64,000 bases of DNA from Octopus sinensis (lineage: Eukaryota): assembly GCF_006345805.1 (NCBI RefSeq), contig NC_043001.1, positions 92,194,001 through 92,258,000 on the forward strand, written 5' to 3'. Positions 1-17,187 of this stretch are shown here, one piece after another. The position numbers and the translations under genes are program-made. Position 1 is the stretch's first letter. The number at the start of each line of letters is the position of its first letter. Under the pieces are notes generated by a model. That model made no database searches and was not told the DNA's origin. It worked only from the letters and a program-made list of their open reading frames with translations.

Positions 1-608
1 AGAGACAGAGAAAGAGAGAGACTTCTAAAGTCATTTCAGTGTTGACTATCTTTATATCCCATGTTGATGATAGTAATGTAGAAATGCATTCATCGGTCCA
101 CAGATGTTTTGAAATGACAACAGGTGTTTTAACACCTGTTGGTTAAAGTGAAAATTTTCTCTGCGACAAACCGCAGTGAAAATGGCATTTTTACAGATCA
201 AATATATGCCAAATATATTTGGAACAATCTAAAAGTTTACACACAAACACACCCCAGGCACACACTCACACAAACACACCCCAGACAACACTCACACAAA
301 CACACCCCAGACACACACTCACACAAACATACTTGGACATATATGTGTATACATATATGTGTATACATATATATGTATAGATCAAAACAGTTTGGTTATT
401 CCTCAACGAGTACCGTAGTGGGTGTCTCTCCATTGTAAACTGTTCGTCAAACGTTTAAGAATGGCGCTCAACGAGTTAGTGGACAAACGAAAGAATGGCA
501 CTCAACACATTTATTGGGAATAACATGTGCGGATCAAAACTGCTTCTGCTTTGATCCATACATGTAACTCCAAATAAATTGTCGAATGCCCTTCTTTTTT
601 GTCCACTC

Positions 609-661
<53 letters not shown>

Positions 662-663
<2 letters not shown>

Positions 664-824
664 CGTAGGTGTGGGTGTGGTGGTGTAGCTTTGCTTACCA
701 ACCACATGGTTTCGGGTTCAGTCCCACTGCGTGGTACCTTGGGCAAGTGTCTTCTGCAATAGCCCCGGGTCGACCAAAGTCCTGTAAGTGGATTTGGTAG
801 ACGGAAACTGAAAGAAGCCCGTCG

Positions 825-867
<43 letters not shown>

Positions 868-1078
868 TTGTATGTATGTATGTATGTATGTATGTATGTA
901 TGTATGTGTGTGCGTGTATATATGTTTGTGTGTCTATGCTTGTGTGTTTACGTCTCCGTAACCTAGCGGTTCGGCAAAAGAGACCGATAAGTGCTGGGGG
1001 TCGATGTGCTCGACTAAATGTGGTGCTCCACCATGGCCACAGTCAAATGACTGAAACAAGTAAAGGAGCAAAGAGTAT
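662..1078 (+). mobile_element. tRNA-derived SINE family B with internal microsatellite
   Basis: Head GGTTCAGTCCCACTGCGTGGTACCTTGGGCAAG, internal (TA)/(TATG)n, tail CAGTCAAATGACTGAAACAAGTAAA. Partial copies at 4748-4851, 13757-13830, 45748-45935, 50236-50300, 55020-55250 and 61905-62090. Confidence 0.88.
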
Positions 1079-1082
1079 ATAG

Positions 1083-1137
<55 letters not shown>

Positions 1138-1799
1138 ATATATATACATATATATAAGTCAACATTTTAATATCTTAAAGCTGATGAATCAACTAATGTG
1201 CTTCTCCATTTTCTAATTGTTATATATACAAACACATATATATATATATATATGTGTGTGTATATATATATATATATGTTTTTGACTGAAGAACGAAGGC
1301 TTTGAATGACCCGTCTGTCTTTTATGTTCGTCCCTTCGTGTATTTCACGTTATTTATTTATGTAAAGGTTTATATATATATATATATATAGTTGCAATGA
1401 ATGTTTGACAGCGACACTTTGATTATTGCCGGCAAACCAAAAGTTTGTAATTACTATCAGTATCCTTTTCCATATAAAATTGAATACGTACTCTACAAAA
1501 GTACTGAGTCATCATCCTTCAGTTTATTTTTAAATTGTTTTTATGTAGCACTTCACTCAATAATACATTAACACACACACACACACACAGAGATACAGAG
1601 AGACATAAACAGACATACATGTATATATGGATATGGTAAAAGAGGGAGAAGAGGGAGAAAAAAATATACGCGAGCATACAATGCGGCATGACTATGCATG
1701 CCATTTACATCTTTAAATATTTATGGGTTGGTCGACTCTGCATCCGTCAAGATAACAAATGTGTTTATTGAAAATACTTTTGTGTTGTAGCTTTGTCTT

Positions 1800-2135
1800 A
1801 GGCATTTATTTTTCATTAGAATAATCCTTGAAAATTTGGGGGAGGGGACTGGTTGATTACATCGTTCCCTGTATTTAACTGGTACTTGGTTTATCGACCC
1901 CGAAAGGATGAAAAGCAAAGTCGACCGCGGCGGAATTTGAACTCAGAACGTAGCGGCGGGTGAAATACCTATTTCTTTTACTACCCACAAGGAGCTAAAC
2001 ACAGAAGAGACAAACAAGGACAGATAAACGGCTTAAGTCGAGTATATCGAACCCAGTGCGTAACTGGTACTTATTTAACCGACCCAGAAAGGATGAAAGG
2101 GAAAGTCGACCTCGGCGGAATTTGAACTCAGAACG
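1800..2135 (-). mobile_element. tRNA-derived SINE family A, dimeric copy
   Basis: Reverse complement of GTTCTGAGTTCAAATTCCGCCGAGGTCGACTTTGCCTTTCATCCTTTCGGGGTCGATAAA, twice. Confidence 0.85.
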
Positions 2136-2386
2136 TAAGAGCAGATCGGATTACCTTTATGAAACCAGGGAAATCACAAACAACTGCTCACTTGGGATCG
2201 AGCTGAAGATATACTGCAATAACAACCACAATAAGAAGCACAACAACAACACTCCCCAACAACAACTGATTTCGTTGTCATATGTGCTTTGTCTCATAGC
2301 GATCAGTTATCTAAGATGTTTCCAGAGAGTGACCAGCAGAGAACGTATGAATGATGAGCAGAGCCGTTTTAACATCAATACAGGGA

Positions 2387-2637
2387 CTATGGTGTGGTAA
2401 ACTTTTAGACCCTAGTCTAGATTTCGAATCCTCTGTACCCCAGGATGGTTTAGCTCTCCACCCGTTAAAAAGCCACCGTTTACGGAATGAGGATAATAAC
2501 GTAGCTTTCGCGCCCGTGCAACCGCCAGTCTATCGCGTGTGGTGGGTGGATTTTCAAGTTGCCACACGCATTCTTAGTAGCTTAGAGTTGGCTCGAATTA
2601 GAGATTATTCTTTGTGGCTAATGGCGTGAGTCCTGAT
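2387..2637 (+). mobile_element. Approx. 250-bp retroposon-like element with a (GAA)n tail, copy 1
   Basis: Reverse complement of 7545-7797, followed by about 32 GAA units. Confidence 0.7.
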
Positions 2638-2639
2638 TG

Positions 2640-2736
2640 GAAGAAGAAGAAGAAGAAGAAGAAGAAGAAGAAGAAGAAGAAGAAGAAGAAGAAGAAGAAG
2701 AAGAAGAAGAAGAAGAAGAAGAAGAAGAAGAAGAAG
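2640..2736 (+). repeat. (GAA)n microsatellite
   Basis: Direct reading, source of the poly-E ORF. Confidence 0.97.
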
Positions 2737-3837
2737 ATGATGATGACAGCAGCATACGTAGATTAGCACTGCGACCTATGACGTCACTGATCACAAAACT
2801 ACCACATGGATGTTATCATACACACCATAATCAGACATACTTTAGCCTTATTACTGCATTTACGTATTTATATAGAAGTAACATCACTTTGTAGGCTCTC
2901 TGATGGATGATTATATATGATGTGTTTAATGCTACTTGATTGGCTCACACCATTCACCAACAATGATTAAGATCAAACTATGTCCCAAGTATAACGGTAT
3001 TGTGAGTCTCTGAACTTGTTGAACCTCGGATCAACAACGGTAAAAAATACAAAACAAAGGCAATTTCTCTCTCTCACATTCTCTCATACTCACACACTCA
3101 CACAAATACACGCACGCACAAAGTACACACAGAAGTACACACACACACGCTCAAATACATACAAACACACAAAGTACACATACACAAGTACATACACAAG
3201 TACATACACACATAAGACGGTGTGGTCTCAGCAGGAACGTCTTTGATCGTAAATATAGACTAAGGTTGTGTACTGGAGTACCTCCTATTTATATTTTTCA
3301 ATGCCTTAGGGGAATTTAGACTCAATACAGCAATTTAACGAAATCACAATTAATCATATAATTGCCCCTACTGCTGAATAAATTTCACATGTAACAACTC
3401 ATATATCCTAATAACAGCGAACTGAGCCTGTGAGAGTCGTATGCGGCTTGTAGACAGCTTGTAAATAGATATAAACCCAATGTGTCGTCAATCGTACTCG
3501 CTCTTCATACGTTATCAACATAACCAGCAACGATTATCTTGAAGTACCTCCTTAGCTTATCAGCATTAGACTTACTTCTCTCGTATCTCCCGCATGATAT
3601 TTGGATTAGCTTCGTGATATTGTGGCTCACTGTTGGCAATTACTACTGCAAAAGTGGTCGTTTTAGGAATTCTGTCATAAAAGGCGAATTAAAATTACAA
3701 TTAGACGCACCGAGTCAACACACTCAACTGCTAGAAACAGAAACCTAATTTCCCTCAGTTCACACTTAATCGCATTAAGATAGGAAAAATACATAGGATA
3801 CACAAACTTACATACATATATACATACATACATACAT

Positions 3838-3877
<40 letters not shown>

Positions 3878-4009
3878 ACATACATACATACATACATACA
3901 TACATACATACATACATACATACATACATACATACATACATAGACGCGTATCCACATATTACTTAAGAAATAAATAGACGTCTTTGTTCCGAGGTATTCT
4001 TCATGAAAT

Positions 4010-4205
4010 CTGACTTGGCTTGGAATTTGGGGGAGCGGACAAGTCGATTACATCGATCTCAGTACTTGACCGGTTCTTTATTTCATCGATCACAAAAGAG
4101 TGAAATGCAAAGATGACCTCGGCGGAATTTGAACTGAGAATGTAAAGAGCCGGAACAAATGCCGCAAAGAATATTCTCCGACGCTCCACTGATACTGACA
4201 GCCCT
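4010..4205 (-). mobile_element. SINE family A
   Basis: Diverged match to family A head and core. Further partial copies near 6130-6375, 12185-12290, 25005-25095 and 50680-50860. Confidence 0.75.
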
Positions 4206-4881
4206 ACTAATCAGGACACAGTGCAGTGTTACCCTATTAGTTAAGCACCTAAGTGAAGGGTACCACTTCAGGTGCTCATCTATCTCAGCAGCTTTGTGAC
4301 ACTTACGTGTGGCACGTATGCCTTCTATTTGACACTACGGGAATGTGCCGTGTGTGTGTATGTGAAGGTCTAAATGGTTTTTCATTATATCGAGATCTAG
4401 AACGAAAAAGGTGTGATATGCTTTATGGATGGAACTGACAGACGGGTAGACGTTGCGGTTGAGTGGTTTACGTGTCTAGACGGAAACAGTGGTAATAAAT
4501 TTCAAACAGCAAACATAGCCGATGCATTTACCCTTGGTATAGAATGCACAATGCATATGAAAATGGGATAGGCTTCAGCTGTTTGAAACTGTGTAGCTTG
4601 TATCAGTAACAAACGAAGGCAATATGAATAGACAAAGTTTTTAAAATGTCTTTCGATGGTATTTGGTTTCATAGCTATGATATCGCCATTTCTTTATTAT
4701 ATGCTAGGATCTTGCTGTCTTGCAATGTTATAGTAAGTAATAGTTTTGTGGATTACAAAAGAATAAGTCTCGGGGTCGAGTTGCTCGATTAAAGGTGGTG
4801 CTCCAGCATGGCCGCAGTCAAATGACTGAAACAAGTAAAAGAGTAAAAGAGTATATATATATATATATATATTTATATATT

Positions 4882-5205
4882 GTCGCTCCGTCGGTTACGA
4901 GGACGAGTGTTCCAGATAATCCGATCAGTGGAACAGCTTGCTTATGAAATAAACGAGCAAATGGCTGACCATCCCACAGACAAGCGAAACCTTAATGTAG
5001 TTCCCAGGGAGATTCAGCGTGCGTGACACAGAATGTGGCAAGGCTGGCCCTTTCAATTAGAGGTACAATTTGTTTTTGCCAGCTGGATGAACTTGAGTAG
5101 CATGAAATAAAGTATCTTGCTCAAGGATACAACACGCCACCGGGTTTGGAACTCACAAGCTTACGATCATGACCCGAATGCCCTAGCCACTAAGCCACGG
5201 GCCTC
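4882..5205 (-). mobile_element. tRNA-derived CORE-like SINE family E
   Basis: Reverse complement of 53836-54155. Confidence 0.82.
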
Positions 5206-5258
5206 CTGACAATATGTCTGCGCGCGCGTGTATGTATATATGTATATATGTATATATG

Positions 5259-5507
5259 TACAAAAATTCTATAATTATGAGTATAATTGTAATTAGTGTT
5301 CAGCAAAATTTGCTTCACCACATACCGAAATTTAGAAATAGCAGCTAAAAACTACTCTTCTACTATTATACTACTGTATTGCTGTCTTGGGCATATCTTA
5401 TAGTAACAGAATAGTAGTTTTTAACTGCTATTTCTAAATTTCGGAATGTGAAGCAAATTTTGCTGAACCCTACTCATAATTATACTCATAATTATAGAAT
5501 TTTTGTA
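5259..5507. repeat. Fold-back/MITE-like element, approx. 100-bp arms
   Basis: TACAAAAATTCTATAATTATGAGTATAATT...AATTATACTCATAATTATAGAATTTTTGTA. Confidence 0.88.
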
Positions 5508-6550
5508 TAAGCTTACCTATAATGGTTCTTTTAACAAAACTAACTACTTGGTAAAATTATTAATTATTAATTAATTAATTAATTAATTTTACCCTTTATT
5601 ACTATTGATATGTATATATGTATGTATGTACGTTCAATCTGAGGATTTGGCCGCTACTCGAACATAAATATATTATCAAAGTTTATGAAATGCATTACTG
5701 TTGCTCTATACCACAAGGCAGTAATTTTTTTAACGTGTATTGAATATCTTCATTGATTTATAGACAGCACCATTTGCATTTGTGTTGTGCATGTTTATAT
5801 AAATATGAGTATATATGTGCGTGTGCGTTTGTACGCATGTGTATATGTGTATGTATTTGTGTGTGTTCAGCATGTTGGCTCAGAGTTTTGTTTCTTCTAA
5901 GATATTTACTCAACCTGAGCTAATATGCAACCAATTGTATCATCATTACTAGCAAAGTAGACAGTATATGAATGAATGGATGTTTGTCAGTTTATATACA
6001 TGTGATTCTTTTATTGGGAAGGTGTGAAAAGAAAGGTTATACAGCAACAAAAGATAGCCAATTTCGTTTAGAAATATGAGTGTTTATAGCTGACATAGAC
6101 AAACCAGAATTTCCTAGCGTTACAATACCACAAATAAATTAAATCAGCCTAAGCGATAACTGGTGCTTGTTTTATTCCACACTCTTGCCAATATCAAAAC
6201 AAGGTGTCATTGTATTAAAAATACAGTATTGGGCTTCTAATTTATTTATTGACCCTGAACGTATGACGGACGATGTTGATCTCGGCGGGATTTGAATTCA
6301 AGGTCAGAGAGCCAAAACAAATGTAGCAGCGCATTTCATCTGAAGTTTTACCGATTCTACCAACTAACTGCCATTTATGTGTGCAATCAAGTATATATGT
6401 ATGTATGTGTATATGTATGTATGTATGTATGTATATATGTATTTATGTATGTATGTATGTATGTATGTATGCATGTATGTATGTATTGTGTGCATCCATA
6501 TATGTAAGTACATATATATGTGTATATATGTATATGTATAATATATATAT

Positions 6551-6582
<32 letters not shown>

Positions 6583-7544
6583 ATTTATGTATGTACGTAT
6601 ATATATATATTATATTAATATATATATGTATGTATGTGTATATATATACACAATTAAAAAATAGGATAAAATCTTTATAAGAAATGATCAAGTAGTAAGC
6701 GTGAAAAACCTCATAAGGGAAAAATTTATTGATATTTCCCTTTAAATATATTTATTTATATTAAGGGCATTACTATACATAAATGCCTCACGCTAGACGA
6801 ACATGCGTGTGTGTATGTAGTGATTACCGTACACAACATTAATGTTGATTTTTTGTTCATTTTTATTTGACTTGATTATGTATGCACTGACGATTAAAAA
6901 GTGCATTTTGTGCACTGGTTATGAAATCATATGATCTTCAGCTGAATCTGTTTTTAAAAGGCCCGCTTAGTGAGTTGCATTCCCTCGCTTTCAGTACAAT
7001 GTGTTTATTATGGTAGTTTTGACTTTAAGAGTCCCTCCTAGCATGAGCCATTTATGAATAGTAATGCCCTTAATATATATATATATATAGATAGAGAGAG
7101 AGAGAGAGAGAGAAAGAGAGGGAGAGAAAGAGAGAGAGAGTGAGAGAAAGAGAGAGAGAGGAAATATAGATACATAGATTTGTGTCTGTATATATATGTA
7201 TATATATGTTATACATTACATGTTATAAACATATGTGTATGTGTGTGTGTGTCTGTGTTTGTGTATATAGTTATATATATGTGCATTTATGTGTTTGCCT
7301 AAGTGTGTGTGTATGTAGTGATTAGCGTACACAACGTTAATGTTTTATAGAGGAGAGCAATGTCTAGAATATACTCTACTGTTGTTACAAGTGCTTGTTT
7401 TTAGTACTCGAGAGGCTTGTAACAAAATGATGTTTGTTGCTGTCATTGTTGCGGTTGTTGTTGTGGCTACTGCTTCTGTTGCCGCTGCACTTGCTGCTGC
7501 TGCTGCTCCTACACCTGCCGATGCTGTTCTTCTTCTTCTTTCAA

Positions 7545-7797
7545 TCAGGACTCACGCCATTAGCCACAAAGAATAATCTCTAATTCGAGCCAACTCTAAG
7601 CTACTAAGAATGCGTGTGGCAACTTGAAGATCCACCCCACCACACGCAATAGACTGGCGGTTGTACGGGTGCGAAAGCTACGTTGTTATCCTCATTCCGT
7701 AAACGGTGGCTTTTTAACGGGTGGAGAGCTAAACCATCCTGGGGTACAGAGAATTAGCAGTCTAGACTAGGATCTGAAAATTTACCACACCATAGTG
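7545..7797 (-). mobile_element. Same (GAA)n-tailed element, copy 2
   Basis: High similarity to 2387-2637, with a short (TTC)n tail at about 7527-7543. Confidence 0.7.
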
Positions 7798-7799
7798 GG

Positions 7800-8025
7800 T
7801 TGCACCACGGTTCCTCTGCTTTGTAGCAGAAGTAGAAAGAAAGAGTGAAAGAAAGTTGTGGTGAAAGAGTACAGCGGGGTTCATCCCCTTCCCACCGGTG
7901 TCTTGTCGAGCTTACATGTTTTTGCTCAATAAACACTCACAATACCCGGTCTGGGAATCGAAACGGCGTTCTTACGACCGTGGGTCCTCTGCACTAACCA
8001 CTGTGCCATTGCGCCTCCACACAAT
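7800..8025 (-). mobile_element. SINE family C, 5' part
   Basis: Reverse complement of the family C head and body. Confidence 0.8.
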
Positions 8026-8220
8026 GCTGTTGTTTAGCCCCTAGTCCACACTAATCCAGCAGAGATATAATCAAATATATATGATGAACACGTTATTTTT
8101 GTGTTTTCTAGGTCTGTGTTCTCTTACGTGTCATTTTTCTTAATCAATACAGTAGCCGTGACACTGTATTTAGGAAAACGCATATCATCCAATATTTCAT
8201 TATTTATTAAGGATAGTAGC

Positions 8221-8305
8221 ATGTATTTTGAAGGAGATTTTGAATCATTGTTTTATAAACCGAGCGACAACGTGGAAGCTCATTTGTTGTCTACTGGAAG
8301 GCAAA
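8221..8305 (+). CDS. Candidate first coding exon of the ETS gene (MYFEGDFESLFYKPSDNVEAHLLSTGRQ)
   Basis: ATG-initiated protein-like stretch. A GT at 8306 gives phase 1 matching exon 9990, but the donor (GTTGAG) is weak. Confidence 0.25.
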
Positions 8306-9159
8306 GTTGAGTGGAAAATCATTTGAAATAAGATCAGCGTGTTACACAAGTGCTTAATATCCGATTAAATCCTTATATAAAATTATAGTTTTACTTCGTT
8401 TATTAGCTCTTGCTACATAAGCGATCTCAGCGGAAATTTTAGATCAGTAACATTCTGCAAAACACATATAGTAAATATTCTTGTCTCCTTTTTCATCATC
8501 TGTGTTGAATTTCATAGTCCATGTGATTGCAGATAGAAAAAACTAGACAGGTGGTTGGTTGATCTTACATGACGTCACTGGCGTGAACGGGTGCGCACAC
8601 TAGCAACAATATTAGCATATGTGGGCATCATTTTCGAGAAGAAAATGCTTTCAACACGATATAAACCATGCCGAAGAAAGCAAATTTTGATTTAGAGCGG
8701 GAAGGAAAGTTAGCATCTATATTTCCACTTGAAATGAAGTTGTAAGATTCTAGTTATTTATCGGAAGATTTTATTGTTGTTCAGTTTCATCTCAGCCCTT
8801 AACATGCAGACATACGATTAATGGATTTCTATCCGAGACCATCTTTATGTTAGTACATCGTGTCTTTCGGTTTTTTTAAAAATACAAGACGCTTGTCACG
8901 CATTTTCAGCGACTGCTTTTAACAGACTGAGAGATCACACTGAGCTTCTCCATTTTATTGTCGTTATATATGTAATGAATTTAAAAATTAACTGTTTTGC
9001 TTATAGAAACAGCAATGATAATAATGAGGGTAATAATGAGCAAGGGGATAGGATAGAAGGGAGTTGAAGTATTTGGAATACACTAACGTGCAGGGAGTAA
9101 TGTTTCACTTGGTGCGTTTGACAAGAATTGGATTATCGGCTTGATGTGTGTCGTGTGAC

Positions 9160-9308
9160 CAACGGTCCAAACATTGAACATCTTTAAACATTCCATAAAA
9201 AAACTTGAAATTACAGGCTTTCAGAATATATCATATGCAATTTTATGTCCTTAATAGTTTTTGAGATATTCAATGTCAAAATGTGCCCAAGACTTCTGGA
9301 ACACCCTG
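9160..9308. mobile_element. Tc1/mariner terminal fragment
   Basis: Ends GACTTCTGGAACACCCTG|TA, the same TIR type as at 30825. Confidence 0.5.
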
Positions 9309-9354
9309 TATAAGAGTTGCGATGTAAATGCAGTCTGTAGATTTATTCGTACAC

Positions 9355-9401
<47 letters not shown>

Positions 9402-9534
9402 ACGCACACACACACACAAACACACACACACACTCACACATACACACACGCACACGCACACACACATTATATATATGCATACATGCATATATATATATAT
9501 ACAAAAACGGACATACATACCATACATATGTATG

Positions 9535-9586
<52 letters not shown>

Positions 9587-9719
9587 ATATATATCACGTG
9601 ATCCCGGGATCACGTGGCCGACCAGACCATCAGATGTTGTTACACATCGCTGGTCCCAATGCGTTCGCATTGTTTTAGCCTTCGAATGACGCCACCCCGC
9701 TGGCTAAGCGAGCAGGCCA

Positions 9720-9757
<38 letters not shown>

Positions 9758-9989
9758 TATACATATAGATAGATTGATAGATATATATACGTATATGTAT
9801 ACGCTTACATATATACATACACACACATATATGTGTACGAATATAGTCTTTGAGAATTAGTTTCATTCTAACATATTTCATATGAATATTGGTTAATGTC
9901 TAATAATATCAATAATTCTTCATAATATGTACGTGCTTACGTTATTTTTGCAAACGATTCTTTCATAAATAATTTCTTTTTGATTCCAG

Positions 9990-10355
9990 AAAACACAAGC
10001 CACGCGGCGCATTACTATCGCAATGATATGCATCCCCTATGGGACCTCTACAACGACGTAGAACAGAAAGATATGTTTCACGGGTCTTCTACAAACCAAT
10101 CCCATGCATTTGCACATACGATGCTTCCAACGACAGAATTAACTCCTGAACAACATCAGCTTCTCTATTTCCGAAATCCACCGTCGTATGAAGAACACAT
10201 GAAAAGATTTCTGACAAACAAGAACCAAGTTGATAATTGCCAAAACACAATGAAAAATGGATATGCTCAGCAGAATTCAACATTCAACTCTGCTTCCAGC
10301 ACCATCGACATGGTTGATCCCTATAAAAGAGATTCAGATGGCTTTTTTAATCCAT
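9990..10355 (+). CDS. ETS transcription factor, N-terminal coding exon (first in-exon ATG at 10028)
   Basis: Acceptor ttttTGATTCCAG|AA at 9989/9990 and donor CCAT|GTAAGT at 10355/10356. 366-nt open frame, phase 1-1, non-repetitive protein-like sequence, in frame with the three downstream exons. Confidence 0.8.
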
Positions 10356-10529
10356 GTAAGTAGTGGAAAATTTGTGATTTTTGATAGAAATCTCAGACCA
10401 ATTCTTCAATTCACAAAGAAAAAAAAATGTAAATGATATATTCATTTCACGTACATACACGAAATCATAAGTTACTGGAATACACACAGTGCTGGTTATG
10501 AATAAATAAATGAATGAATAAATGATGAA

Positions 10530-10589
<60 letters not shown>

Positions 10590-10686
10590 TATTTTATGTA
10601 TGTGTGTATGTGTGTTTATACAATGTATACACACACACATATATTATATTATATATATGTATGTATATATATAATGGAAAACCTCT

Positions 10687-10777
10687 GTAAATGGCTGATG
10701 ATTGCTCAACATTTTAAAACTGTTGTAATACAATATTTAATAAAATGATGTAGCGTGAAACGATCGTACTAAATTAC
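10687..10777 (+). ncRNA. Hammerhead ribozyme motif, copy 1 (minimal type I, long imperfect stem II)
   Basis: CTGATGA 10695-10701, GAAAC 10757-10761, palindromic ACGATCGT, GTA cleavage triplet 10766-10768. Stems I and II are imperfect (T.T at the base of stem II). Confidence 0.6.
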
Positions 10778-10899
10778 CGAGATATTCTTGTTGCTTATTT
10801 TGATTATAATCGCCCCATGGATTTATATGGATAACACCATACAAAATTCTGGTGCATCTAACTTAAGTACCATATTCATCTTAATCTAAATTTTGCTGA

Positions 10900-10945
<46 letters not shown>

Positions 10946-11061
10946 ATAATATATATATAATATATATTTATATGTATGTGTGTATGTGTGTTTATACATA
11001 TGTATACACACAACATATATATATTATATATATGTATGTATATATATAATGGAAAACCTCT

Positions 11062-11151
11062 GTAAATGGCTGATGATTGCTCAACATTTTAAAACTGTTG
11101 TAATACAATATTTAATAAAATGATGTAGCGTGAAACGATCGTACTAAATAC
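11062..11151 (+). ncRNA. Hammerhead ribozyme motif, copy 2 (375 nt downstream of copy 1)
   Basis: CTGATGA 11070-11076, GAAAC 11132-11136, GATC, GTA 11141-11143. Near-identical to copy 1. Confidence 0.55.
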
Positions 11152-11709
11152 CGAGATATTCTTGTTGCTTATTTTGATTATAATCGCCCCATGGATTTAT
11201 ATGGATAACACCATACAAAATTCTGGTGCATCTAACTTAAGTACCATATTCATCTTAATCTAAATTTTGCTGAATTTAATATATTATATATATATATATT
11301 ATATATATATACATACACACACACACACATATATATATATATACATACATACATACTGTATTATATCCGTATGTATTCAGTCATGCTGTGAAATGAAACC
11401 ATATGAGAGTATATACCTATGTACATACATACATACATACATACATACATACATACATACATAGAAAAGAACATGCGTACATAAATACACACATACTTGC
11501 ATATGTACAAGTGGGTAGCTAACGCGCATCTTACAAATACAATGTTTCAACGGAGCAGTAAAATGATGGACGAAATGTTGACAAGCATTTCGCCCGGTGT
11601 GCTATCGATTCCACCAGCTTATCACTTTTATAATAGAAGTAATATATTGAATATGATATATCAGAGAGAACTATTTCCCTATATTTAATTGCTTTTTTAT
11701 GTTTTTCAG

Positions 11710-16561: not shown

Positions 16562-17187
16562 CTAGCGGTCAGGTTCAGTTATGGCAGTTTTTACTTGAGT
16601 TGCTATTGGATGACACGAATACTTCTTGCATCAAATGGGACGGCGGTCGTGGAGAATTCCGTATGGTGGATCCAGAAGAAGTTGCTCGAAAATGGGGCAA
16701 AAGAAAGAACAAACCAAGTATGAACTACGATAAACTGAGCCGCGCTTTGCGTTATTATTACGAAAAGCAGATTTTATCAAAAGTTCAAGGCAAACGCTAC
16801 ACTTACAAATTCAACTTCAAAATGATACAGCAGGCGCAGAAATGCTCGTCTTCGACAGGAAGCGGAAGTGATTCCGGTTCCCCTTATCGGAGCCCAAGCA
16901 GCCCATACAGCATGGAAACGTATTCCTGTTATGACGGAGCTGTCCCAAATGTTGGCGGGTATTCGATCGTTCAGCACAACACATACGCCCAGCAGCCTGC
17001 CGTTGATATGTCCTACATAGATAACCATCTATCATCATATAGAAAACAGAATATGAATACAGTTTATCAAGCGAACATGGTGCCATTAGAAAACACATTC
17101 CCAGACACTTTAATGCCAATAACAGCATCGACAAGCGAAACCGTGTATGACACATACGGTTCACAAACACAATATACATATTTGTAA
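16562..17187 (+). CDS. ETS-domain terminal exon (ERG/FLI/FEV-like, divergent) with Ser/Tyr-rich C-terminus
   Basis: Translation [14 protein letters not shown]...[23 protein letters not shown]...[10 protein letters not shown] is a canonical ETS domain. Acceptor ttcattttgtAG at 16560-16561, stop TAA ending 17187. A phase-1 intron just before SGQ is as I recall for ERG/FLI. Exact orthology not resolved. Confidence 0.96.

What the first reader, a model, noticed from the sequence alone, without database searches (positions are those of the whole stretch)
10590..11280. Two hammerhead motifs in tandem, 375 nt apart, on the sense strand of an ETS intron (retrozyme or double-hammerhead layout)
Seen: a duplicated approx. 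375-bp unit between TA arrays, each copy carrying CTGATGA..GAAAC-GATC-GTA with a perfectly palindromic ACGATCGT stem III. Both are on the transcribed strand, between exons 10355 and 11710. Established: minimal type-I hammerheads with palindromic stem III, from Penelope-like elements and metazoan non-LTR retrozymes, cleave as dimers and can release 150-400-nt monomers that circularise. Inference: ETS pre-mRNA could pair the two motifs in cis, be cut co-transcriptionally just upstream of the skippable microexon, and release a 375-nt (circular) RNA. Caveats: stems I and II are imperfect, and the copies differ only by small indels, so the duplication may be an assembly error.
Basis: partly seen in the sequence, partly recalled or inferred. 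Interest (0 to 1): 0.8.

Follow-up and report, generated by a model that had tools for sequence, protein, structure and literature searches.

The report
Duplicated Penelope-element tail with hammerhead motifs
The two hammerhead motifs are real, but they are the ribozyme-bearing 3' tails of a common, 5'-truncated Penelope-like (Hydra-clade) retrotransposon copy that sits in a TA microsatellite and was duplicated in tandem inside a probable ETS-gene intron, so the finding is ordinary.

Summary
Observation confirmed. Window 10532-11311 holds 2.1 copies of a 375-bp unit. Each unit carries CUGAUGA...GAAAC-GAUC-GUA, with predicted cuts after 10768 and 11143; chance expects 0.02 such matches per window.

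The non-microsatellite part of the unit (about 10672-10906) is the 3' tail of a high-copy dispersed repeat of this 2.7-Gb, probably octopus, genome. Copies share one 3' end abutting (TA)n, are 5'-truncated at varying points and often have an inverted partner. Longer relatives encode an RT plus C-terminal GIY-YIG protein with the diagnostic motifs of the Hydra clade of Penelope-like elements.

Across four subfamilies the hammerhead core is conserved and helices I, II and III are kept by compensatory changes (94% of cells paired against 28-57% in slid controls). A model built without the window's subfamily finds exactly these two sites (E about 1e-20). Rfam misses them, probably because helix II is about 55 nt long.

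The window copies carry lesions: U·U at 10.1-11.1, a 4-nt deletion in distal helix II, and 1 nt lost from helix I in copy B. The two copies differ by indels only, so the duplication is either recent or an assembly artefact.

This scan has already reported the same kind of element many times elsewhere in this genome. Interest is low.

The parts
10533..10671 (.). (TA)n array followed by a TG/CA-rich imperfect palindrome.
10672..10906 (+). Copy A: 5'-truncated 3' tail of a Hydra-clade Penelope-like element. The start could be as early as about 10660. The copy ends at ...GCTGAATTT and abuts (TA)n.
   Evidence: 93% identity to family copy L024 over 10672-10906. 2,722 first-look candidates; 49 matches reported from the 40 candidates scored, the roughly 40 near-full-length ones at about 93-95% identity. 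Shared 3' end plus variable 5' truncation.
10674..10790 (+). Hammerhead motif A (helix I, core, long helix II, core, helix III, helix I)
   Evidence: Model R1, built without this subfamily: 95.5 bits, E 2.6e-20. Covariation.
10695..10701 (+). Core box CUGAUGA (C3-A9) of hammerhead A
   Evidence: invariant or nearly invariant (at least 90%) columns in A1/A3
10702..10756 (+). Helix II of hammerhead A, 55 nt. The basal pairs are U·U, U·G, G-C, C-G, U-A. The distal hairpin is shortened by a 4-nt deletion.
10757..10768 (+). GAA (G12-A14), then the palindromic minimal helix III ACGAUCGU (10760-10767), then A17. The predicted cut lies between 10768 and 10769.
   Evidence: The pair at alignment columns 99-102 changes G-C to A-U between subfamilies.
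10809..10906 (+). One-sided tail of the element. It is present on the + arm and absent from the inverted partner arms of the family.
   Evidence: L019
10903..11046 (.). (TA)n plus the TG/CA-rich spacer between the two copies, a duplicate of 10533-10671
   Evidence: TRF
11047..11278 (+). Copy B of the element tail. It shows no substitutions against copy A, only three indels.
11049..11164 (+). Hammerhead motif B: CUGAUGA at 11070-11076, GAAAC at 11132-11136, palindrome at 11135-11142, A17 at 11143. One U is missing from the 3' strand of helix I.
   Evidence: R1: 89.9 bits, E 5.8e-19
11279..11355 (.). Downstream TA / TACA microsatellite
   Evidence: TRF
9980..10355 (+). Probable upstream coding exon: an open frame ending at a GTAAGT donor
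   Evidence: not verified with RNA
16567..16851 (+). Ets-domain exon of the host gene
   Evidence: Pfam PF00178, E 3.4e-36

Best explanation
Window 10532-11311 is a (TA)n microsatellite. It received one 5'-truncated insertion of a Hydra-clade Penelope-like retrotransposon, of which only the last 235-250 bp (the non-coding 3' tail) are present.

The block [microsatellite + tail] was later duplicated in tandem, or appears duplicated in the assembly.

Each tail carries the family's type-I hammerhead motif. It has the catalytic core CUGAUGA/GAAA, an imperfect helix I, an unusually long (about 55 nt) helix II, and a minimal palindromic helix III that can only become a stable helix by pairing with a second copy.

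In the parent element this ribozyme lies in the pseudo-LTR. It is thought to process more-than-unit-length element transcripts. That step is inferred from the literature, not shown here.

At this locus the motifs are passengers in a probable intron of an ETS gene. They could in principle pair in cis and cut the pre-mRNA after 10768 and 11143. However, the copies carry lesions and nothing indicates a host function.
For: Identity as a mobile-element tail:
- The core query 10674-10900 gave 2,722 first-look candidates; 49 matches were reported from the 40 candidates scored, the roughly 40 near-full-length ones at 93-95% identity and scattered over many contigs.
- All copies share one 3' end followed by (TA)n. 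They extend upstream by anything from 3 to more than 1,300 bp.
- Many copies have an inverted partner. 10 head-to-head pairs occur among the first 100 exact hits.

Link to a coding Penelope-like element:
- Longer copies run into ORFs (L038, L055). These are homologous to the 809-aa ORF L053:1779-4205.
- An alignment of that ORF with 18 database relatives shows RWK, ADKT, YRDD, CxCX5C, GIY-YIG without CCHH, CxxC and CxH.
- These are the features Craig et al. 2021 list for the Hydra clade, together with insertion into (TA)n, length under 3 kb and hammerheads near the 3' end (PMC8557442).

The hammerhead:
- 27 sequences from four subfamilies keep the core, with every core column invariant or nearly so. 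94.3% of cells pair in 20 pairs, against 28-57% when the partners are slid.
- 7 pairs show changes on both sides, spread over helices I, II (basal and distal) and III.
- Model R1, built only from subfamilies B, C and D, hits the window exactly twice, at E 2.6e-20 and 5.8e-19.
- Genome-wide exact-word counts are 417, 535 and 1,848 for three variants. The reversed control gives 0.

The duplication:
- The copies show 0 substitutions and 3 indels over 280 nt.
- They share about 8 private variants against the family.
Against: - No Rfam hammerhead model matches, even at E up to 10.
- Pfam and PDB sequence searches give no significant hit for the ORFs. The clade assignment therefore rests on motifs compared with a published description, not on a tree.
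- The minimum-free-energy fold of the 118-nt motif is not the hammerhead fold. The constrained hammerhead fold is about 4.9 kcal/mol less stable.
- The 10.1-11.1 pair is U·U in this subfamily.
- No read evidence could be obtained for the duplication or for transcripts.
Confidence: 0.88

Rival explanations
1. A non-LTR retrozyme. The 375-bp unit is itself a non-autonomous mobile monomer that is transcribed, self-cleaves at both hammerheads and circulates as a 375-nt circular RNA.
For: - The unit length and tandem layout fit the published range of 170-400 nt (PMC7229834).
- A 2026 preprint derives animal retrozymes from the pseudo-LTRs of Penelope-like elements.
- Other short direct tandems of hammerhead-bearing tails exist in this genome: L036 at 431 bp, L078 at 399 bp, L079 at 632 bp.
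- Earlier scan notes describe true retrozyme arrays in this genome.
Against: - About a third of the unit is local TA/TG microsatellite.
- The mobile part continues upstream into coding sequence of a Penelope-like element in other copies.
- Among the matches reported for the 40 scored candidates, and the first 100 exact hits, no other locus has this unit in direct tandem.
- Only 2.1 copies are present.
- The two copies share private mutations, so they duplicated in place.
Confidence: 0.07
2. Assembly artefact. Only one copy of the tail exists at this locus, and the assembler duplicated it while resolving the TA arrays.
For: - The two copies have no substitutions, only indels. Two of the three indels are in low-complexity sequence.
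- Structures of Penelope-like elements in microsatellites are known to trouble assemblies (PMC8557442).
Against: - A 1-nt deletion in unique sequence distinguishes copy B.
- Comparable tandems elsewhere show 2-3.5% divergence and so are real.
- Neither point is decisive. Read support could not be examined.
Confidence: 0.2
3. A host-domesticated intronic ribozyme pair. It cuts the ETS pre-mRNA to regulate splicing of the downstream micro-exon or transcript levels.
For: - Sense orientation, in cis, and a palindromic helix III that allows a double hammerhead.
- Intronic hammerheads exist in amniotes (cited in PMC7229834).
Against: - The copies are typical decaying family members. Their model scores (95.5 and 89.9 bits) fall below those of most, though not all, of the intact family copies searched (roughly 84-115 bits).
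- They carry extra lesions.
- The duplication is very recent.
- Hammerheads of Penelope-like elements cleave poorly in vitro (PMC4209133).
- Retrozymes are reported as depleted from introns.
Confidence: 0.04
4. A chance co-occurrence of CUGAUGA and GAAA in AT-rich DNA, with no ribozyme ancestry.
For: - No Rfam hit.
- The hammerhead fold is not the minimum-free-energy fold.
Against: - 0.02 matches expected per window.
- Core invariant or nearly so, with compensatory changes in all helices across subfamilies.
- An independent model gives E about 1e-20.
Confidence: 0.01

Closest known systems
Hydra clade of Penelope-like elements (Craig et al. 2021, PMC8557442)
   Same: Relatives of the window's tail encode RT plus a C-terminal GIY-YIG domain with RWK, DKT and CxCX5C, no CCHH, and CxxC/CxH. 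Homologous proteins in the database sit on contigs of about 2-3 kb. The elements insert into (TA)n, show 5' truncation and inverted partners, and carry a hammerhead near the 3' end. The clade has been reported in Mollusca.
   Different: The window holds only the non-coding tail. The hammerhead has a helix II of about 55-62 nt and is missed by Rfam, whereas the paper speaks of canonical hammerheads.
Hammerheads of Penelope-like elements with minimal palindromic helix III, acting as dimers (Cervera and de la Pena 2014, PMC4209133)
   Same: A type-I motif in the pseudo-LTR. Helix III is reduced to a palindrome (ACGAUCGU or ACAAUUGU). Helix II is longer than usual and helix I is short or imperfect. 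Consensus families are full of compensatory changes.
   Different: Helix II is far longer than the 6-8 bp described. There is no unpaired nucleotide between A9 and 10.1. The G10.1-C11.1 pair that the paper calls highly conserved is U·U in the window's subfamily (and in subfamily D), A-U in subfamily C and G-C only in subfamily B.
Metazoan non-LTR retrozymes (Cervera and de la Pena 2020, PMC7229834; Li et al. 2026 preprint, 10.64898/2026.07.22.740005)
   Same: A direct tandem of units a few hundred nt long, AT-rich, each with a type-I hammerhead. Cutting at both sites would release a monomer that a tRNA ligase could circularise.
   Different: Only two units are present. A third of the unit is host microsatellite. 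The mobile part is the tail of a coding element rather than an independent non-coding monomer. No RNA evidence is available.
Rfam Hammerhead_1 (RF00163)
   Same: The same core, the same type-I topology and the same kind of short helix III. Seven bona fide RF00163 hits exist elsewhere in this genome.
   Different: The window's motifs score below every reporting threshold, most probably because of the 55-nt helix II.

Membership tests
Hammerhead ribozyme, type I | Catalytic core C3-U4-G5-A6-N7-G8-A9 and G12-A13-A14 | tested here: met
   CUGAUGA at 10695-10701 and 11070-11076; GAA at 10757-10759 and 11132-11134. The core columns are invariant or nearly invariant (at least 90%) across 27 family sequences.
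Hammerhead ribozyme, type I | A15.1-U16.1 pair and an NUH cleavage triplet | tested here: met
   A10760-U10767; the triplet is GUA, ending at 10768. The pair at alignment columns 97-104 is A-U in 27 of 27 sequences.
Hammerhead ribozyme, type I | Helices I, II and III around the core, with helix I open | tested here: met
   20 pairs, 94.3% of cells paired against 28-57% when slid. Changes on both sides occur in helix I (1 pair), helix II (3 basal and 2 distal pairs) and helix III (1 pair).
Hammerhead ribozyme, type I | Purine-pyrimidine closing pair 10.1-11.1 (usually G-C) | tested here: not met
   U·U in both window copies and in all subfamily A and D sequences. It is A-U in subfamily C and G-C in subfamily B.
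Hammerhead ribozyme, type I | Score above the gathering threshold of an Rfam hammerhead model | tested here: not met
   No hammerhead family was reported at gathering score over the window, nor at E up to 10 over 10400-11500.
Hammerhead ribozyme, type I | Site-specific self-cleavage | not testable with these tools
Penelope-like element, Hydra clade | RT with RWK and DKT motifs, plus C-terminal GIY-YIG with a CxCX5C linker, no CCHH, and CxxC/CxH | tested here: met
   Met in relatives of the tail (L053 ORF and P0001-P0018; L038 and L055 homologous). The window itself holds no ORF of the element.
Penelope-like element, Hydra clade | Insertion into (TA)n | tested here: met
   TA arrays lie on both sides of each window copy. 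The 3' end abuts (TA)n in about 80-90% of 30 aligned copies.
Penelope-like element, Hydra clade | Common 3' end, variable 5' truncation, inverted or tandem partial copies (pseudo-LTRs) | tested here: met
   Upstream extension ranges from 3 to more than 1,300 bp. Inverted partners appear. Direct hammerheads 2,628 bp apart occur on C1.
Penelope-like element, Hydra clade | RT groups with Hydra-clade RTs in a phylogeny | not tested
   No reference Hydra sequences were available; the paper's supplements are not held. Pfam gives only a sub-threshold RVT_1 hit for P0001.
Non-LTR retrozyme | Tandem repeats of about 170-400 bp, each with a type-I hammerhead | tested here: met
   2.1 copies of 375 bp, each with the motif.
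Non-LTR retrozyme | The repeat unit itself is the non-coding mobile monomer, found as arrays at many loci | tested here: not met
   Other copies are single tails or head-to-head pairs that continue into coding sequence. The spacer is local microsatellite.
Non-LTR retrozyme | Monomer-length linear and circular RNAs | not testable with these tools

The most novel reading that the evidence does not exclude
The two tails form an active double hammerhead in the nascent ETS pre-mRNA. The palindromic helix III strands of the two copies would pair over 8 bp. The intron would be severed after 10768 and 11143, releasing a 375-nt RNA with 5'-OH and 2',3'-cyclic phosphate ends that a tRNA ligase circularises. 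A very recent duplication of a transposon tail would then have created a new cis-acting control on an ETS transcription-factor gene.
Probability: 0.05. Interest if true: 0.6.

Novelty: new member of a known kind. Interest (0 to 1): 0.2.

Why it matters
For the genome scan this is mainly a clean negative. A striking "double hammerhead in an ETS intron" turns out to be a duplicated tail of a very abundant retrotransposon family.

Three smaller points have some value.
- Octopus Hydra-clade Penelope-like elements carry a hammerhead with a 55-62-nt helix II that Rfam models miss. Ribozyme censuses in cephalopods therefore undercount them. At least 2,800 exact-word copies of three variants exist here.
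- Two abundant subfamilies have U·U at the 10.1-11.1 position while still showing compensatory change elsewhere in helix II. This makes them a natural test of how much that pair matters in vivo.
- Sense-oriented tandem tails in introns are natural constructs for asking whether hammerheads of Penelope-like elements cut host pre-mRNAs.

Tried and rejected
- Rfam at gathering score over the whole window, and at E up to 10 over 10400-11500, gave no hammerhead. It returned only low-complexity, sub-threshold microRNA-like hits in the TG/TA repeats. Rfam on four related loci found nothing.
- Pfam on the element ORFs gave nothing significant. There was only a sub-threshold RVT_1 hit for one database relative. 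A PDB profile search gave nothing.
- Read evidence could not be obtained. The look-up of sequencing runs listed 24 runs, all kept as contigs.
The window as a whole was only read or scanned by reference as a target.
- Minimum-free-energy folding does not return the hammerhead fold. I do not count this against the motif, because the fold is supported by covariation.
- RNAalifold recovered only the distal helix II hairpin.
- A genome-wide search with my covariance model failed twice on the server. Copy numbers therefore come from exact-word counts.
- I considered a SINE or MITE origin (simple-repeat tail, inverted copies). I rejected it because copies continue into RT/GIY-YIG coding sequence.
- I looked for a PNT-domain exon upstream to confirm the gene model and found none in 1-10400. 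The intron assignment stays probable only.
- The paper's supplementary hammerhead list was not available.

Full report
**What is in the sequence**

Window 10532-11311 contains 2.1 copies of a 375-bp unit at 96% identity. A 130-nt block is identical at spacing 375, and a 154-nt block is 95% identical at spacing 374. Each unit starts with a (TA)n array and a TG/CA-rich imperfect palindrome, followed by about 235-250 bp of complex sequence.

The pattern CTGATGA-N(45-75)-GAAAC-NNNN-GTA occurs exactly twice in the window, at 10695-10768 and 11070-11143 on the + strand. Shuffles expect 0.02 matches.

**Gene context**

An Ets domain is encoded on the + strand at 16567-16851 (Pfam E 3.4e-36). An open frame at 9980-10355 ends at a GTAAGT donor. 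The repeats therefore lie, in sense orientation, in what is probably an intron of an ETS gene. I could not verify the exon structure with RNA, and I found no PNT exon upstream.

**What the unit is**

The complex part (query 10674-10900) is a dispersed high-copy repeat of the window's own 2.7-Gb assembly. There were 2,722 first-look candidates; 49 matches were reported from the 40 candidates scored, the roughly 40 near-full-length ones at 93-95% identity and on many contigs.

Aligned copies share one 3' end (...GCTGAAC/TTT) followed by (TA)n in about 80-90% of cases. Their upstream extent varies from 3 to more than 1,300 bp. That is the signature of a reverse-transcribed element, not of a satellite.

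Many copies have an inverted partner a few tens to hundreds of bp away. 10 head-to-head pairs occur among the first 100 exact hits of the subfamily's hammerhead word.

Longer copies (L038, L039, L055) run into ORFs. These are homologous, with frameshifts, to an 809-aa ORF at L053:1779-4205. Database relatives of that ORF are 450-880 aa proteins on contigs of about 2-3 kb.

Their alignment shows the following motifs:
- an N-terminal RWK motif;
- ADKT;
- RT motifs including an invariant YRDD;
- a CxCX5C linker;
- a GIY-YIG domain without the CCHH insertion;
- CxxC and CxH around the conserved E and N.

These are, item by item, the features that Craig et al. 2021 give for the Hydra clade of Penelope-like elements. 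That paper also lists length under 3 kb, near-universal insertion into (TA)n, occurrence in Mollusca and readily detected hammerheads (PMC8557442).

Pfam and PDB sequence searches are silent on these proteins, and I built no RT tree. The clade assignment therefore rests on motifs.

One database hit is named from Octopus sinensis. With the assembly size, this suggests an octopus host. That is an inference.

**Is the hammerhead real?**

Rfam finds no hammerhead here at any threshold, although it finds seven canonical type-I hammerheads elsewhere in this genome. I therefore compared the homologous tail region of four subfamilies taken from this genome: A (the window's), B, C and D.

In the 27-sequence alignment A3, the core boxes CUGA(U/A)GA and GAAA, and A15.1-U16.1, are invariant or nearly so. 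The flanking helices change in a compensatory way:
- Basal helix II reads GUACU/AGUAC, AUACG/CGUAU, AUACU/AGUAU or UUGCU/AGCGU.
- The distal helix II hairpin changes two U-A pairs to C-G.
- Helix III changes ACGAUCGU to ACAAUUGU, so it stays palindromic.
- Helix I pair 1.2-2.2 is G-C, A-U or G·U.

Overall, 94.3% of 505 cells form standard pairs, against 28-57% when the 3' partners are slid by 1-3 columns. 7 of 20 pairs show changes on both sides (22-sequence version).

A covariance model built only from subfamilies B, C and D hits the 64-kb window exactly twice. The hits are at 10674-10790 (95.5 bits, E 2.6e-20) and 11049-11164 (89.9 bits, E 5.8e-19).

Exact-word counts in the genome are 417 (A type), 535 (B type) and 1,848 (C type). 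The reversed control words give none.

The motif is therefore a bona fide, selected hammerhead-type structure of the element's tail. Its helix II of 55-62 nt is probably what defeats the Rfam models.

A competing hairpin (GUACGA/UCGUAC) appears in minimum-free-energy folds. It is supported only by one-sided changes and is broken in subfamily A. The constrained hammerhead fold of the window copy costs about 4.9 kcal/mol against the minimum.

**State of the two window copies**

They belong to subfamily A. In this subfamily the pair closing helix II next to the core (10.1-11.1) is U·U, not G-C (subfamily B) or A-U (subfamily C). Subfamily D is also U·U.

Cervera and de la Pena list G10.1-C11.1 as highly conserved in hammerheads of Penelope-like elements (PMC4209133). 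I expect U·U to weaken catalysis, which is an inference from general hammerhead knowledge. However, the compensatory A-U/G-C difference at 10.3-11.3 between the two U·U subfamilies suggests helix II stayed under selection.

The window copies also carry private lesions:
- a 4-nt deletion that shortens the distal helix II hairpin;
- a G·U instead of G-C at 1.2-2.2;
- in copy B, loss of one U from the 3' strand of helix I.

Their model scores are lower than those of most, though not all, of the intact family members searched, which scored roughly 84-115 bits.

**The duplication**

Outside the microsatellite the two copies show no substitutions and three indels over 280 nt. They share about eight variants not seen in other family members.

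The block [microsatellite + tail] was therefore duplicated in place after those changes arose, or was duplicated by the assembler. It does not represent two insertions.

Direct tandems of hammerhead-bearing tails do exist elsewhere with 2-3.5% divergence: L036 at 431 bp, L078 at 399 bp, L079 at 632 bp. Such duplications are thus a real, recurrent feature.

I could not examine reads. I used no letters from those places as a query afterwards. Later calls only read or scanned the window by reference.

**How it most likely works**

- Shown: the tails are Penelope-like-element fragments that carry a conserved hammerhead fold with a helix III too short to stand alone.
- From the literature: such hammerheads sit in pseudo-LTRs. 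They act poorly or not at all as monomers and weakly as dimers. They are proposed to trim more-than-unit transcripts, perhaps giving circular templates that explain the tandem insertions of Penelope-like elements (PMC4209133).
- Inferred: on an ETS pre-mRNA the two copies, 375 nt apart, could pair their palindromes (the 8-bp duplex is predicted stable) and cut. Given the lesions and the weak activity of this class, I put this at about 5% for any biologically meaningful effect.

**Comparison and novelty**

The finding is a member of a known kind: the pseudo-LTR hammerhead of a Hydra-clade Penelope-like element. It resembles a retrozyme dimer in form, but it fails the test that the unit be the mobile monomer.

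Earlier notes of this same scan describe the same kind of element many times in this genome, namely truncated Hydra-clade copies in (TA)n and hammerheads with a long second helix, as well as true retrozyme arrays. I treated those notes as leads. My own tests reach the same reading. Interest is low.

Noticed in passing
L019:1215-1735 (G000:C1, around 11886500-11887020); In head-to-head pairs of this family, the inverted arm stops about 40 nt 3' of the hammerhead cut site (...TTATTTTGAT) and abuts (TA)n directly. The forward arm carries a further tail of about 95 nt (TATAATCACCCC...GCTGAACTT) before (TA)n. This one-sided tail is much longer than the 30-40 bp described for Penelope-like elements.
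   Followed up: partly
L036:1337-2219 (G000:C16, around 25146200-25147080): A tandem of 431 bp x 2.0 copies at 98% identity, starting with (TA)n. Each unit has an Rfam Hammerhead_1 hit on the minus strand. A weaker hit of my model R1 (64.6 bits) lies on the plus strand at 1200-1323. This is another hammerhead-bearing family in the same kind of layout.
   Followed up: partly
L079:247-1501 (G000:C3, around 157272050-157273300): A tandem duplication (period about 630 bp, 96.5% identity) of a whole head-to-head pair of hammerhead tails. Four R1 hits alternate in strand (-, +, -, +).
   Followed up: no
L033:1501-1548 and 2011-2125: A canonical Rfam type-I hammerhead lies 460 nt upstream of a 5S rRNA-like sequence (46 bits), on the same strand.
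   Followed up: no
L048:1873-2015: A subfamily B copy has a 21-nt internal duplication that produces two CTGATGA boxes in a row.
   Followed up: no
L013:3037-3125 (-): An unrelated short hammerhead-like motif, CTGATGA...GAAAC-GTAC-GTA, with the palindrome ACGTACGT. It is probably the tail of another family of Penelope-like elements.
   Followed up: no
window 10579-10672, 10963-11046, 11276-11465: TG/CA/TA-rich imperfect palindromes give sub-threshold mir-297/mir-466-like Rfam scores (32-42 bits against gathering scores of 85-90). These are low-complexity hairpins, not microRNA genes.
   Followed up: partly
G000:C1:75560785 and 75563413 (+): Two subfamily A hammerhead words lie 2,628 bp apart on one strand. 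This spacing is what a unit-length element flanked by direct pseudo-LTRs would give.
   Followed up: no
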